From the sequence record MZ501268.1: a stretch of DNA of 64,000 nucleotides. The stretch is one strand, 5' to 3'. The translations under genes were made by a program, and so were the position numbers. Position 1 is the first letter of the stretch, and every line of letters starts with the position of its first letter. Below the pieces are notes generated by a model, which was not told the origin of the DNA, did no database searches, and worked only from the letters and a program-made list of their open reading frames with translations. Positions 1 through 34,595 of the stretch are shown here, piece after piece.

Positions 1-16
1 GTGTTGCTGTGGTCAT

Positions 17-417
17 GTTGACTTTATTACCGTACTGGTAGTCAACTGAACGTAAGTCATCGTAGTACTTTCGTACATTACTGAGCGATAATTGTGTAAG
101 GTTACCGCGTGGCATCGGTAGCTCTTTCAGTAGCCTCACCACGAGGTGTTGATTCAATATGGAATTCTCATTTGACCGCCAATGGTTGAGAGCGCGTTCC
201 ATATTGCGATACGTAATGTCTTTAAGTCGTTTGTGTAGCGGCGTCAGCATGCTACCGTAATTGGTAGTGACGTCAGAGGTAAATAGATTGAGCATACGAC
301 CTCATTGACAATATGTAAAAGTGTACATGACCCGAGTATATATTATGTAAGAGGTCACACTCTTGACTCTCTGTGTAAGCAGAGGGTCGAACTGAGGGTA
401 CTGCTGTCCAAACAGCA
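17..417. ncRNA. Candidate structured non-coding RNA or cis element upstream of chimallin
   Basis: No ORF of 60 aa or more. Hairpins read by eye: 17-23/40-46, 65-68/73-76, 103-107/116-120, 134-137/143-146, perfect 10-bp stem 155-164/197-206, 242-246/268-272 with 252-256/263-267, 365-373/380-388, 402-407/412-417. Confidence 0.4.
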
Positions 418-422
418 AATTC

Positions 423-458
423 AAAAAAATTACAGTTCTATATTACCTGAGTGTATAG
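423..458 (+). promoter_or_regulatory. phiKZ-type early (vRNAP) promoter for chimallin
   Basis: TATATTAC at 439-446 matches the phiKZ early promoter core. It has an upstream AAAATTACAG and a downstream GTGTATA, like the other copies in this window. Confidence 0.75.
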
Positions 459-517
459 AGTAATCTATGCAACATTAGCTAATGTAAACTTGCAAGTAAA
501 TTAAAAGGAATCGTAGC

Positions 518-2665
518 ATGCAAACTCCTGAAGACAAAAACAAAGGCAAAGATCAGCAGCCAACTGATCAGCAGACGCCTTCCAATTCCGCGATGGGTGA
601 TGCGTTAAGCGCGGCGCAACAGAAGCAGAGTCAGCAGCAGCCACAAGGGCAGCAAACTCCGCCTCCTACAGCGCAGCAACCGCAGCAGAATGCTCAACCA
701 GCGCAAGCAGCAACACAGCAACAGCAACACACTCCTCAATTTCATCAGACTGTAGGTAACAGCAACGTGAACAATTCTACTATTCCAAACAACGGCAACG
801 ATCAGCAGGCGCCACGTCAGTCACGTATCTACGGCATGAACGAACGCCGTGAACGTATCTTCGACGCGACCGCTCATGGCGAAAACTTCAAAGTTGCGCT
901 GGAAGCAACCAAAGAAGTGCTGGAAGGTTACGAAGATAAAGGCTTCAACAAGTCTTTCTTCCTGGTGCCGGTCACTGATGTGTCTCTGCACTGTAACGGC
1001 CTGGCGTATGTGTCTGTGTTCAACTTCGGTGGTACCACCAAAGCCATCACCTACACCCTGATGCTGGAAAACACCGGTTCTCAGCTGAAGCCTCAGCGCG
1101 GTAATGACCCGATCACCGGCGAACCGTTTGAGATCCCACGCATGACCGGTTCTCAGTACGACAACACCTACTGGTCTGTTGTACAGCGTCTGGTCGGCCA
1201 TCGCATCGGTAACAACGCAGAAGTGCTGGATGCCGGCGCTTGTGTTATCCACTCAGAAATGAAGTGGGACGACAAGTCTGCAATCAAACAGCTGCTGAAC
1301 AACGCAGAAAACGCCACCATGGCGTATGCGAACAGCCTGTCCGGTTACCGCATCGAGCATCCGTTCAACATCGCTCAGGAAGTTGATCCACAGATCGACC
1401 GTATCACTGCAGGCTTCAACTTCAACCCGCAGCCGATGTTCACTGTCGATGGTCAGCCAATCCGTAACGACGTTGAAATCAAACTGTCTGCTTACGCTGA
1501 AGGCGCTGGTCAGGTTCAGACTACCGAACCGATCACTACCGTTAACGGCTACGTGGAACTGATCGCTGCACCACAGCAGCAGATGGGCTTCCAGCAGCAG
1601 ATGATGATGGGTATGAACCCACAGCAGCAGATGCAGTTCTATCGCCGCTTCTACCCGCAGTTCACCATCACGTCAACTGGTACCGGTATCTCTAACGCAC
1701 AGGGTCCTGAGTTCCAGCTGCTGGCGCTGTTCGCTGCTTCACTGATTGGTGAAAACAGCAACTGGCATCACGCGTTTGCGCCGAAGATGGTAAACGGTGT
1801 CGATATCAACGATATCGGTGCGATCAACTACGAACTGAAAATGGGTCTGGAAAGCCCAGATGACCGTCCGAAGAAGATCATCACCAAAGACCACAGCTTC
1901 AACACGCAGTCTCTGCATCAGCTGCTGTACACCGCATGCCATGAATCCATGTCAATCGCGCTGGACATCGAAGAAACTGGTACCCGTACCTGGGTGAACT
2001 CCATGCTGCTTCTGGCAGGTGGTCAGCCAAGCGGTAACGCTGCACAACTGAGCCCACAAGGTCAGCTGGCGCACAAAGCAATCATCCAGGCTGCGAACAA
2101 CCTGACCAACGGTGAGTTCAGCAAGCACTTCACTGACCAGAACCAGCTGATCGCGGTTCGTGACGGTACCCGTATTCAGGGTGGTTACTACGTCTCTAAA
2201 GACAACCATCAGAAAATGGACATCCGTAACGTCGACCTGCTGGCGGTTCTGAACTTCGTCGGTGAAACTGATCCACGCATCGTGGAAGAGTGGAAGATGA
2301 TCACCAGCTCTACGTCTGGTATGTCTACTCCGAAACGTGTTGCACTGCGTCAGCAGAAACTGCAGCAGCTGCTGGGTGAGTCTTTCGTACTGAAAGCTTA
2401 CTACGAGCGTGTAGTGATCAACTGGGCATTTACCGATGCGCTGCGTAAAGCAGTAGTAGCGGCTGGCCTGGTAGTGCGTCCGGAAAATACCAACATGCAG
2501 TACAACGTGCAGAGCTACGGTACGCCAATGGCGCAGCTGTACGGTATGCCTACTAACATCGCAAGTTCCCTGCAGCAGGGTTCTTTCGCAACTGATAACC
2601 AGGGTCGTGTTGTTAACCTGGCTCAGTTCCGTACTGGCGGTGCATTCGGCGTGTTCGGCGGCTAA
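518..2665 (+). CDS. chmA: Chimallin (phage nuclear shell protein, phiKZ gp54-like) with Q-rich N-terminal extension
   Basis: 715 aa, strong codon bias, early promoter, and position directly upstream of the gp55-like RNAP subunit as in phiKZ. Assignment rests on synteny and size. Confidence 0.8.
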   Translation: MQTPEDKNKGKDQQPTDQQTPSNSAMGDALSAAQQKQSQQQPQGQQTPPPTAQQPQQNAQPAQAATQQQQHTPQFHQTVGNSNVNNSTIPNNGNDQQAPRQSRIYGMNERRERIFDATAHGENFKVALEATKEVLEGYEDKGFNKSFFLVPVTDVSLHCNGLAYVSVFNFGGTTKAITYTLMLENTGSQLKPQRGNDPITGEPFEIPRMTGSQYDNTYWSVVQRLVGHRIGNNAEVLDAGACVIHSEMKWDDKSAIKQLLNNAENATMAYANSLSGYRIEHPFNIAQEVDPQIDRITAGFNFNPQPMFTVDGQPIRNDVEIKLSAYAEGAGQVQTTEPITTVNGYVELIAAPQQQMGFQQQMMMGMNPQQQMQFYRRFYPQFTITSTGTGISNAQGPEFQLLALFAASLIGENSNWHHAFAPKMVNGVDINDIGAINYELKMGLESPDDRPKKIITKDHSFNTQSLHQLLYTACHESMSIALDIEETGTRTWVNSMLLLAGGQPSGNAAQLSPQGQLAHKAIIQAANNLTNGEFSKHFTDQNQLIAVRDGTRIQGGYYVSKDNHQKMDIRNVDLLAVLNFVGETDPRIVEEWKMITSSTSGMSTPKRVALRQQKLQQLLGESFVLKAYYERVVINWAFTDALRKAVVAAGLVVRPENTNMQYNVQSYGTPMAQLYGMPTNIASSLQQGSFATDNQGRVVNLAQFRTGGAFGVFGG

Positions 2666-2697
2666 GCAGTAGTCGTATCCAAGTTGTAACATAGACG

Positions 2698-2731
2698 GGT
2701 AGGCGGGAAACCGCCTACCTTGTTTATGCCC
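2698..2731 (+). terminator. Hairpin followed by TTATGCCC
   Basis: GGTAGGCGG-GAAA-CCGCCTACC, then TTGTTTATGCCC and a T-rich tract. Confidence 0.8.
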
Positions 2732-34540: not shown

Positions 34541-34595
34541 CGGCATATAGGTCCTCCATTACGGAGGACCTTTTATGACACTTCTTTTTTTTTTT
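34541..34595. terminator. Bidirectional terminator
   Basis: CGGCATAT-AGGTCCTCC..GGAGGACCT-TTTATGAC plus a long T tract, between convergent genes. Confidence 0.75.

What the first reader, a model, noticed from the sequence alone, without database searches (positions are those of the whole stretch)
1..420. Hairpin-dense ~420-nt non-coding region directly upstream of the chimallin promoter
Seen in sequence: in a genome with very short intergenic gaps, 517 nt lack an ORF and at least 8 stems occur. They include a perfect 10-bp stem CAATATGGAA/TTCCATATTG (155-164/197-206) enclosing TCTCA/TGAGA, and a nested hairpin at 242-272. Two mutually exclusive pairings compete for 296-303: GTCGT 226-230 and GAGGT 276-280. 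The region lies upstream of the TATATTAC promoter (439), so it is not that transcript's 5' UTR; a second TATATTAT sits at 339-346. Inference: an unannotated structured RNA, regulatory switch or origin-like element linked to the nuclear shell gene.
Basis: partly seen in the sequence, partly recalled or inferred. Interest (0 to 1): 0.7.

Follow-up and report, generated by a model that had tools for sequence, protein, structure and literature searches.

The report
Chimallin control region beside coding sequence
Most of the supposed 420-base non-coding RNA is the start of a conserved gene on the opposite strand; what remains is the 222-base control region of the phage nuclear-shell gene, an arrangement with two candidate promoters and a conserved RNA hairpin whose outline is already known from phage phiKZ.

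Summary
The window is Erwinia jumbo phage AH06. Positions 1-295 are not non-coding. They are the first 98 codons of the minus-strand gene AH06_238 (373 aa, phrog_3938, a homolog of phiKZ gp52), which runs off the window edge. The evidence is homologs in about 150 jumbo-phage records and substitutions of 30/16/6 at codon positions 3/1/2.

But 1-295 folds no better than other windows on the + strand (z -1.35), and the 10-bp inverted repeat is one of 8 in 64 kb.

The true intergenic region is 296-517, and there the + strand is exceptional (z -5.6, top 0.5% of windows). It holds:
- an early-type promoter, CTATATTAC-N4-GTG, at 438-453 (this motif class occurs 24 forward : 0 reverse in the genome);
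- a conserved upstream TATG motif at 344-347;
- between them, a 12-bp hairpin (363-390) kept by compensatory and wobble changes on the + strand only, with unrelated stem sequences at the same place in Proteus-10-, SA002- and phiKZ-like phages.

phiKZ chimallin has two mapped transcription start sites (early plus middle), so this looks like the same dual-promoter design with a conserved leader hairpin.

Unexplained: synonymous change is suppressed in codons 1-80 of gene 238, including a 15-mer identical in seven of ten sequences from three clades.

The parts
1..295 (-). First 98 codons of AH06_238 (373 aa; phrog_3938; homolog of phiKZ gp52, which RefSeq annotates as 'structural head protein'). 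The gene continues beyond the window start.
   Evidence: Open frame. GenBank CDS 185174-186295. tblastn hits in 150 phage records, many aligned from residue 1. phrog_3938, E 1.7e-114. blastp to phiKZ gp52, E 1e-14. Substitutions 30/16/6 at codon positions 3/1/2. dN/dS 0.15-0.38.
86..100 (-). Ultra-conserved 15-mer inside the coding sequence: CTT ACA CAA TTA TCG (L-T-Q-L-S), read on the + strand as CGATAATTGTGTAAG. Function unknown.
   Evidence: Codon-identical in 7 of 10 sequences from three clades whose synonymous sites are otherwise saturated. RAY has one synonymous change (TCT), L017 one T-to-S change (TCA), and Proteus phage 10 both. Three of the only four all-identical codons in the first 140 lie here. 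Unique in the AH06 genome.
155..206 (.).
   Evidence: The arms are invariant in 4 lineages, so there is no covariation to judge. The inner stem is partly broken in relatives. It is one of 8 such repeats in 64 kb.
240..274 (.). Nested hairpin within codons 8-19 of gene 238. It is nucleotide-invariant in the four Agricanvirus-level lineages.
   Evidence: Seven consecutive identical codons (D V T T N Y G).
296..517 (.). The true intergenic region: a divergent control region between gene 238 (-) and chimallin (+). GC is 36-42%.
   Evidence: Annotation. The same 200-220-nt divergent gap occurs in pEa_SNUABM_37, SA002 and Proteus phage 10. 91% identity to RAY, against 82% for the adjacent coding sequence. 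+ strand z -5.6. Composition.
299..303 (-). Shine-Dalgarno sequence GAGGT of gene 238, 3 nt upstream of its ATG.
   Evidence: Read directly from the sequence. Conserved in the alignment.
324..353 (+). Candidate upstream (middle/late-type) chimallin promoter P2: TACA at 324-327 preceded by AAAA, then TATG at 344-347 followed by TAAGAG.
   Evidence: TAT..TATGT.GAG is conserved in three clades. phiKZ and Proteus phage 10 share AATAATACT-N13-TATG. The phiKZ middle motif is TACT at about -22 and the late motif is T(-3)ATG(+1) (PMC8244752, PMC7598289). The extended motif is not enriched genome-wide.
363..390 (+). HP1: a 12-bp hairpin with a GUAA loop, dG -16.9 kcal/mol, conserved as a structure.
   Evidence: z -5.9. 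Three variable pairs are all kept, including U-A to C-G. Paired 12/12 on the + strand but 9/12 on the - strand in all four lineages. Unrelated stems sit at the same position in the Proteus-10, SNU37/SA002, phiKZ, Xoo-sp14 and SNU54 lineages.
401..418 (+). HP2: a small hairpin (6 bp, dG -7.0), only weakly conserved.
   Evidence: The sequence changes in relatives and pairing is only partly retained.
420..453 (+). Early (virion RNA polymerase type) chimallin promoter P1: A-rich TTCAAAAAAATTACA, then CTATATTAC (438-446), N4, GTG (451-453).
   Evidence: Invariant CTATATTAC..GTGTA in all clades. The pattern with up to 1 mismatch occurs 24 forward: 0 reverse in the genome (controls 0/1), and this copy is one of 3 perfect matches. 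It matches the phiKZ and 201phi2-1 early consensus.
452..471 (+). HP3: a hairpin at the predicted 5' end of the early transcript (8 bp, GUAA loop, dG -7.6).
   Evidence: z -5.2. Other clades have different hairpins or palindromes at the same place, for example TTACCATGGTAA in the SNU37 clade.
472..497 (.). Two perfect palindromes in the chimallin 5' UTR: ACATTAGCTAATGT (472-485) and ACTTGCAAGT (488-497).
   Evidence: As an RNA hairpin the first is only -1.5 kcal/mol. Other clades carry different perfect palindromes at the same position, including a symmetric double change (CAATCGCGATTG to CATTCGCGAATG).
518..2665 (+). Chimallin (major nuclear shell protein), AH06_239, with Shine-Dalgarno AAAAGGAA at 503-510.
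   Evidence: 88% amino-acid identity to RAY 'major nuclear shell protein chimallin'.

Best explanation
The interval is two different things.

(1) Positions 1-295 are protein-coding. They are the 5' end of the minus-strand gene AH06_238, a conserved chimallivirus gene homologous to phiKZ gp52.

(2) Positions 296-517 are the divergent control region that this gene shares with chimallin.

Chimallin is most likely transcribed from two tandem promoters:
- A downstream early promoter for the virion RNA polymerase (CTATATTAC-N4-GTG, 438-453). Its start is near 451-453 and it gives a ~66-nt leader that begins with a hairpin.
- An upstream middle/late-type promoter (A-rich + TACA, then TATG at 344-347). 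It gives a ~170-nt leader whose 5' part folds into the conserved 12-bp hairpin HP1 (363-390).

This would allow shell protein to be made first from injected DNA and later from replicating DNA.

Shown here: the coding status of 1-295; the promoter-class membership of P1 by motif; the conservation of the TATG motif; and the + strand-specific structural conservation of HP1.

Inferred: that P2 actually fires, and that HP1 works as a 5' stem-loop that stabilises the longer mRNA or modulates its translation.
For: Coding status of 1-295:
- Open frame, annotation, 150 homologous records, phrog_3938.
- Codon-phase bias of substitutions, 30/16/6.

Synteny: DNA pol / gp52-like gene (-) / chimallin (+) / RNAP beta' is conserved out to phiKZ.

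P1:
- Invariant across clades.
- The motif class occurs 24:0 by strand in the genome.
- It agrees with published early-promoter consensus sequences.

P2:
- The TATG-containing motif is conserved in three clades.
- phiKZ and Proteus phage 10 share identical AATAATACT-N13-TATG spacing.

Precedent:
- dRNA-seq in phiKZ found a primary start site with the early motif plus a secondary start site with the middle motif for PHIKZ054 (PMC8244752).
- ONT-cappable-seq found PHIKZ054 in many transcription units.

HP1:
- dG -16.9, z -5.9.
- Compensatory and wobble changes keep it 12/12 paired on the + strand, against 9/12 on the - strand.
- The layout of TAT[G/A] motif, hairpin, 21-54 nt, early-type promoter and 65-94-nt UTR recurs in six lineages.

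Folding: 296-517 on the + strand has z -5.6, top 0.5% of windows.
Against: - No transcript data exist for AH06 or any Agricanvirus. The public runs that hold the sequence gave only low-depth, undirected contigs, so neither start site is mapped.
- The extended P2 motif is not enriched in the genome.
- In AH06 the TAC element is TACA rather than TACT and sits 3 nt further from TATG than in phiKZ.
- The role of HP1 is inferred from its position only.
- The promoter of gene 238 was not identified.
- The explanation does not account for the suppressed synonymous divergence in codons 1-80 of gene 238.
Confidence: 0.75

Rival explanations
1. One reading: the whole ~420-517 nt is one unannotated structured non-coding RNA, riboswitch-like switch or replication-origin-like element.
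For: - Many predicted stems.
- The 1-420 + strand folds with z -3.9.
- The perfect 10-bp inverted repeat and the nested hairpin are nucleotide-invariant in four lineages.
Against: - 1-295 is a conserved protein-coding sequence.
- Alone, 1-295 has z -1.35 on the + strand.
- No Rfam hit.
- No iterons, and no skew switch beyond what the gene-strand change explains.
- The 104-150 and inner 166-191 stems are broken in relatives.
- A strong terminator after DNA pol argues against + strand read-through.
Confidence: 0.04
2. The 5' ~240 nt of gene 238 (about window 55-295) carries a second, nucleotide-level function on top of coding. Candidates are mRNA structure controlling its own translation, an antisense or long-leader RNA, or a DNA site for a regulator of the divergent promoters. 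This is compatible with the best explanation and adds a layer to it.
For: - Identical-codon fraction across four lineages is 32/57 in codons 1-98, against 13/75 in codons 99-222 (Fisher p 6e-6), with equal dN.
- AH06 vs RAY pS is 0.36-0.39 in codons 1-80, 0.72-0.87 through most of the rest of the gene, and 0.52-0.85 in most neighbouring genes.
- RNAP beta' gives a baseline identical-codon fraction of 0.34.
- The independent SA002/SNU37 clade shows peaks at codons 1-20 and 61-80.
- The 15-mer CTTACACAATTATCG is identical in seven of ten sequences from three clades, with single-base variants in RAY, L017 and Proteus phage 10.
- The - strand of 1-295 has z -2.9, 5th percentile.
Against: - Chimallin itself shows a similar identical-codon fraction (about 0.5). 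A shared low-divergence block with a mosaic boundary inside gene 238 is therefore not excluded for the Agricanvirus-level clade.
- Only four lineages were compared.
- There is no covariation in the coding stems.
- In clade 2, codons 21-60, which correspond to the 10-bp repeat, are not constrained.
- The 15-mer matches no recognised motif and has no other copy in the genome.
Confidence: 0.4
3. HP1 and the UTR palindromes act at the DNA level, or as a terminator or insulator, rather than as leader RNA structure. Examples are operators for a dimeric regulator that times chimallin transcription, or a block to transcription entering P1.
For: - The UTR elements are perfect palindromes, including their centres (AGCT, CGCG, TGCA, GATC in different lineages), which an RNA hairpin does not require.
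- The 14-nt palindrome is only -1.5 kcal/mol as RNA.
- HP1 lies upstream of the early start site, so early transcripts would not contain it.
Against: - HP1 tolerates G.U wobbles at different positions in every lineage, and these are A.C mismatches on the other strand. That points to an RNA hairpin.
- The stem sequence is unrelated between clades while the position is kept, which is hard to reconcile with a sequence-specific DNA site.
- No U-tract follows HP1 on either strand, and the terminator scan finds nothing in 1-517.
Confidence: 0.15

Closest known systems
phiKZ PHIKZ054 (chimallin) upstream region with a primary early start site and a secondary middle start site (Wicke et al. 2020, PMC8244752)
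   Same: - Same gene and same neighbourhood: DNA pol, a gp52-like gene on the opposite strand, RNAP beta' downstream.
- The TATATTAC early motif lies about 80 nt before the ATG.
- An upstream A-rich/TAC(T) ... TATG motif is present.
- A stable hairpin lies between the two motifs, and there is a palindrome in the UTR.
   Different: - phiKZ has an extra small gene (gp53) between gp52 and gp54.
- The hairpin and palindrome sequences are unrelated.
- The start sites are mapped in phiKZ but only predicted in AH06.
- The AH06 upstream element reads TACA, with 3 nt more spacing.
- The held text of the phiKZ papers I read does not mention the hairpin.
Early/late dual promoters of continuously expressed genes in phage AR9 (PMC5312081, as summarised in PMC7598289)
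   Same: The logic is the same: a gene needed throughout infection carries one promoter for the virion RNA polymerase and one for the non-virion RNA polymerase.
   Different: AR9 lacks a phage nucleus, has uracil DNA, and uses different promoter motifs.
5'-terminal stem-loops that stabilise bacterial and phage mRNAs (for example the E. coli ompA leader). This comparison rests on my own knowledge and was not tested here.
   Same: A stable hairpin lies close to the predicted 5' end of a highly expressed mRNA: HP1 for the long transcript and HP3 for the short one.
   Different: No decay or RNase data exist here. HP1 begins about 16 nt from the predicted start rather than at the very end.
Rho-independent terminators
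   Same: HP1 is a G+C-containing hairpin in an intergenic region.
   Different: No U-tract follows on either strand, no + strand gene lies upstream to terminate, and the terminator scan is negative.

Membership tests
Protein-coding sequence (for window 1-295) | An uninterrupted reading frame with a start codon and a ribosome-binding site | tested here: met
   The minus frame is open from the ATG at 295-293 to beyond position 1. GAGGT lies 3 nt upstream.
Protein-coding sequence (for window 1-295) | Homologous proteins in other genomes, aligned over this part | tested here: met
   150 phage records, many aligned from residue 1. phrog_3938 covers residues 1-368.
Protein-coding sequence (for window 1-295) | Substitutions concentrated at third codon positions, with dN/dS below 1 | tested here: met
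   30/16/6 at positions 3/1/2. dN/dS is 0.15-0.38.
phiKZ-type early (virion RNA polymerase) promoter | A conserved AT-rich ~10-nt motif (TATATTAC in phiKZ) centred near -10, with an A/T-rich stretch upstream | tested here: met
   CTATATTAC at 438-446, preceded by TTCAAAAAAATTACA. It is invariant across clades and agrees with the published consensus.
phiKZ-type early (virion RNA polymerase) promoter | The motif recurs across the genome in one orientation, upstream of genes | tested here: met
   24 forward and 0 reverse matches, controls 0/1. Copies within the window lie 35-80 nt before start codons.
phiKZ-type early (virion RNA polymerase) promoter | A primary 5' end mapped just downstream, early in infection and independent of protein synthesis | not testable with these tools
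   No RNA data are available for this phage.
phiKZ-type middle/late (non-virion RNA polymerase) promoter | T(-3)ATG(+1) at the start site (late), or TACT at about -22 preceded by an A-rich run (middle) | tested here: inconclusive
   TATG at 344-347 is conserved in three clades and in phiKZ. AH06 has AAAA + TACA at -23 to -20 rather than TACT at -20 to -17 as in phiKZ and Proteus phage 10.
phiKZ-type middle/late (non-virion RNA polymerase) promoter | A recurrent motif class in the genome | tested here: not met
   The extended motif TATDTTATGTRRGAG with up to 2 mismatches gives 1 forward and 3 reverse matches, against controls of 3/2. The 4-nt core is too short to test.
Rho-independent terminator (for HP1) | A hairpin followed directly by a U-tract | tested here: not met
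   GAACUGAGGG follows on the + strand and AAGAGUGUGA on the - strand. The scan finds no terminator in 1-517.
Curated RNA family or riboswitch (Rfam 15) | A covariance-model match at or near the gathering score | tested here: not met
   The only match is a chance-level isrG hit (12 bits against a gathering score of 100) inside chimallin.
Replication origin | Iterons or repeated binding sites next to an AT-rich unwinding element | tested here: not met
   Only two-copy repeats of 9-12 nt, which are expected by chance. GC falls to 36%, as is usual for promoters.
Conserved structured RNA element (for HP1) | Base pairs maintained by compensatory changes, with a strand preference | tested here: met
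   Three variable pairs are kept, one by a double change. Pairing is 12/12 on the + strand and 9/12 on the - strand. Unrelated stems occupy the same position in other clades. The sample is small: four lineages per clade.

The most novel reading that the evidence does not exclude
The 5' ~240 nt of the gp52-like gene and the 222-nt intergenic region together form one cis-acting module of about 460 nt, under nucleotide-level selection, that governs chimallin and/or gp52-like expression. It would include an embedded 15-mer that is near-invariant across three clades, a conserved leader hairpin, and lineage-specific perfect palindromes that could be operators for an unknown dimeric regulator of nuclear-shell synthesis.
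Probability: 0.15. Interest if true: 0.6.

Novelty: new member of a known kind. Interest (0 to 1): 0.3.

Why it matters
Chimallin builds the phage nucleus, the structure that shields jumbo-phage DNA from CRISPR and restriction. How its synthesis is handed from the injected virion polymerase to the later non-virion polymerase is only sketched, and only for phiKZ.

This analysis shows that the layout of upstream TATG motif, structured leader, early promoter and palindromic UTR is conserved from Erwinia to Pseudomonas phages. It gives concrete elements to mutate: HP1, the palindromes and the 15-mer.

For the scan, the practical lesson is that an ORF running off a window edge can make coding sequence look like a long non-coding gap.

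Tried and rejected
- Rfam search of 1-1000: nothing.
- RNA-seq: two run searches and one read-laying gave only low-depth, undirected contigs of near-identical phage, with no 5' ends.
- IMG/VR search with the gene 238 protein: no close relatives. The chimallin alignment search did give 25 loci.
- Overlapping small + strand ORF at 159-260 (33 aa): rejected, because a stop codon interrupts it in L017.
- Host sigma-70 promoters and intrinsic terminators in 1-700: at chance level.
- Early-promoter-like TACATTAC at 74-81: 5 mismatches to the genome-wide pattern, so rejected.
- Genome-wide copies of the 15-mer: none. The IMG/VR exact scan gave 46 hits, mostly at chance level apart from the known homologs.
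- A recombination tract as the sole cause of low dS in the 5' end of gene 238: not excluded, but dN is unchanged while dS falls at least 4-fold, and clade 2 shows only local peaks.
- Supplementary start-site tables for phiKZ and 201phi2-1, and Ceyssens 2014: not held.
- The promoter of gene 238 could not be identified.

Full report
**Identity of the window.** Megablast places window 1-2700 at 186001-188700 of Erwinia phage AH06 (MZ501268.1, genus Agricanvirus) at 100% identity. Sixteen E. amylovora Agricanvirus records match at about 87.5%. The ORF at 518-2665 is chimallin: it shares 88% amino-acid identity with RAY's annotated 'major nuclear shell protein chimallin'.

**Checking the observation.** The central premise, '517 nt lack an ORF', is wrong.
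- A minus-strand frame is open from the ATG at 295-293, preceded by GAGGT, to beyond position 1.
- The ORF listing does not report it because it runs off the window edge.
- GenBank annotates it as AH06_238, 373 aa.

It is a real gene:
- tblastn finds it in 150 jumbo-phage records, many aligned from residue 1.
- It matches phrog_3938 end to end, E 1.7e-114.
- It is homologous to phiKZ gp52, which RefSeq annotates as 'structural head protein'.
- AH06-versus-RAY substitutions in 1-295 fall 30/16/6 on codon positions 3/1/2.

The gene order DNA pol (+), gp52-like gene (-), chimallin (+), RNAP beta' (+) is conserved from Agricanvirus through pEa_SNUABM_37, SA002, Proteus phage 10, Eowyn and Xoo-sp14 to phiKZ. 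The true intergenic gap is 222 nt (296-517), and it is a divergent one.

**Is the folding more than chance?** The 1-420 + strand gives z -3.9. I ranked the pieces against 580 windows of 220 nt tiled over the 64-kb window on both strands.

| Piece | Strand | z | Rank among background windows |
|---|---|---|---|
| 1-295 | + | -1.35 | 25th percentile |
| 1-295 | - | -2.9 | 5th percentile |
| 296-517 | + | -5.6 | top 0.5% |
| 296-517 | - | -1.2 | unremarkable |

The signal therefore belongs to the + strand of the true intergenic region.
- The perfect 10-bp inverted repeat is one of eight such repeats in the window, against two expected.
- In relatives its arms are invariant, so they give no covariation information.
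- The enclosed TCTCA/TGAGA stem and the 104-150 stem are broken by codon-spaced substitutions.

**What 296-517 contains.** I aligned AH06 with RAY, two intermediate IMG/VR relatives (L017, L020), the SNU37/SA002/L018/L019 clade and Proteus phage 10. The alignment shows the following.

(a) An early-type promoter.
- CTATATTAC-N4/5-GTGTA (438-455) is invariant, preceded by an A/T-rich TTCAAA...TTACA.
- In the AH06 genome, CTATATTAYNNNNGTG with up to one mismatch occurs 24 times forward and never reverse (controls 0 and 1). The chimallin copy is one of three perfect matches.
- This matches the published early virion-RNA-polymerase promoter consensus of phiKZ (TATATTAC) and 201phi2-1.

(b) A second conserved motif upstream.
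- It reads TATATTATGTAAGAG (339-353) in AH06, TATAGTATGTGGAG in the SNU37 clade, and TTATTATATGTAGAG in Proteus phage 10.
- All forms contain TATG, the core of phiKZ late promoters, T(-3)ATG(+1).
- phiKZ itself has AAATAATACTCAGATTGTAATAATATGTAG upstream of gp54. Proteus phage 10 shares the same AATAATACT-N13-TATG spacing.
- This fits the published phiKZ middle motif, TACT at about -22 after an A-rich run.

(c) A hairpin, HP1, between the two motifs.
- In AH06 it is 363-390: 12 bp, GUAA loop, -16.9 kcal/mol, z -5.9.
- Among the four Agricanvirus-level lineages, three pairs vary and all stay paired: U.G to U-A, U-A to C-G, and C-G to U.G.
- On the + strand it is paired 12/12 in every lineage. 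On the - strand it always has three A.C mismatches.
- In the second clade, L018 differs from SNU37 by two changes that both give + strand wobbles.
- Proteus phage 10 (GACTCCTC/GAGGAGTC), the SNU37 clade (CATCTAGG/CCTAGATG), phiKZ (a nested hairpin), the Xoo-sp14 group (CGGCAGC-UUCG-GCUGCUG) and the SNU54 group carry unrelated stems at the same place, 21-54 nt upstream of the early-type motif.

(d) Structure in the early transcript's leader.
- Downstream of the predicted early start there is a 5'-proximal hairpin (452-471, -7.6 kcal/mol).
- Two perfect palindromes follow: ACATTAGCTAATGT at 472-485 and ACTTGCAAGT at 488-497.

**Precedent.** Wicke et al. (PMC8244752) mapped two start sites for PHIKZ054. 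The primary site carries the early motif and the secondary site the middle motif. They concluded that the gene is expressed in both the early and the middle phase. Putzeys et al. report PHIKZ054 in many transcription units. AR9 genes that are expressed continuously likewise carry both early and late promoters.

The AH06 region is therefore best read as the Agricanvirus version of a dual-promoter chimallin control region. HP1 would lie near the 5' end of the longer transcript. I found no mention of this hairpin or of the UTR palindromes in the held text of those papers. Their supplementary start-site tables were not available.

**What is not shown.**
- No RNA data exist for this phage. The public runs that hold it gave only low-depth, undirected contigs.
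- The extended upstream motif is not enriched genome-wide, so the case for P2 rests on cross-clade conservation and the phiKZ precedent.
- HP1 is not a terminator: no U-tract follows, and the terminator scan finds nothing in 1-517.
- No Rfam family matches, and there are no iterons or other origin features.
- A strong bidirectional terminator between DNA pol and gene 238 makes + strand read-through across 1-295 unlikely.
- The promoter of gene 238 was not identified.

**An unexpected residue.** Although 1-295 is coding, its synonymous sites are unusually conserved.
- Across four lineages, 32 of 57 amino-acid-conserved codons are identical in codons 1-98, against 13 of 75 in codons 99-222 (Fisher p 6e-6).
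- Pairwise dS is 0.54-0.74 in the 5' part and saturated in the 3' part, while dN is unchanged.
- For AH06 versus RAY, pS is 0.36-0.39 in codons 1-80, 0.72-0.87 through most of the rest of the gene (0.56 in codons 201-240), and 0.52-0.85 in most neighbouring genes.
- The identical-codon fraction for RNAP beta' is 0.34.

Chimallin itself shows about 0.5 throughout, in both clades. That is expected for a very highly expressed gene, but it also means a shared low-divergence block with a boundary inside gene 238 cannot be excluded for this clade.

In the independent SNU37/SA002 clade, only codons 1-20 and 61-80 stand out. Within codons 61-80 lies a 15-mer, CTT ACA CAA TTA TCG (window 86-100).
- It is identical in seven of ten sequences from three clades. 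RAY has one synonymous change (TCT), L017 one T-to-S change (TCA), and Proteus phage 10 both.
- Three of the only four all-identical codons in the first 140 lie in it.
- It is unique in the genome.
- It is absent, as a 7-codon gap, from Eowyn, SNU54 and phiKZ gp52.

I could not assign it a function. A + strand ORF at 159-260 is interrupted in L017.

**Verdict.** The finding as written is mostly an artefact of a gene that runs off the window edge. The part that survives is a compact, well-conserved control region for the nuclear-shell gene, of a kind already outlined for phiKZ. It comes with a newly noticed conserved leader hairpin and some unexplained nucleotide-level conservation nearby.

Noticed in passing
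window 86-100 (minus-strand codons ~66-70 of AH06_238): The 15-mer CTTACACAATTATCG (L-T-Q-L-S) is identical in seven of ten sequences from three clades whose synonymous sites are otherwise saturated. Single-base variants occur in RAY, L017 and Proteus phage 10. It is unique in the genome and is missing, as a 7-codon gap, from the Eowyn, SNU54 and phiKZ homologs. Its function is unknown.
   Followed up: partly
window ~55-295 (codons 1-80 of AH06_238): Synonymous divergence is at least 4-fold lower than in the rest of the gene, with unchanged dN. This points either to an overlapping nucleotide-level function or to a mosaic boundary of a low-divergence block that includes chimallin.
   Followed up: partly
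window 472-485 and 488-497; equivalent positions in L003, L004, L013, L015, L018: The chimallin 5' UTR carries perfect palindromes whose sequence differs by lineage: ACATTAGCTAATGT, CAATCGCGATTG / CATTCGCGAATG, AAACATTGCAATGTTT and TTCTTGATCAAGAA. Their centres are also self-complementary, and the AH06 one is only -1.5 kcal/mol as an RNA hairpin, so it may be a DNA operator. None of the six other early-type promoter sites in the window is followed by a palindrome longer than 8 nt.
   Followed up: partly
window 312-321 and 344-353: A tandem near-duplicate, TATGTAAAAG / TATGTAAGAG, 32 nt apart. Only the second copy is conserved outside the Agricanvirus-level clade.
   Followed up: no
L001 3126-3180 (AH06 record ~185126-185180, just upstream of the window): A strong hairpin, CTCTTAGCGGG-ATAA-CCCGCTAAGAG, followed by a T-run, lies between the convergent DNA polymerase and AH06_238 genes. 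It is probably a bidirectional terminator.
   Followed up: no
window 518-2665 compared with neighbouring genes: Chimallin has markedly lower synonymous divergence than its neighbours in two independent clades (pS 0.31, against 0.52-0.85 in most neighbouring genes). This is consistent with strong codon selection in a very highly expressed gene.
   Followed up: partly
window 1321-1540 (-), 32781 (+), 34541 (-), 46421 (-), 54341 (both strands): These 220-nt windows have folding z-scores at or below -5.4 in the background scan, comparable to the chimallin control region. I did not examine them. The one near 34541 is close to the frameshift site that other notes report.
   Followed up: no
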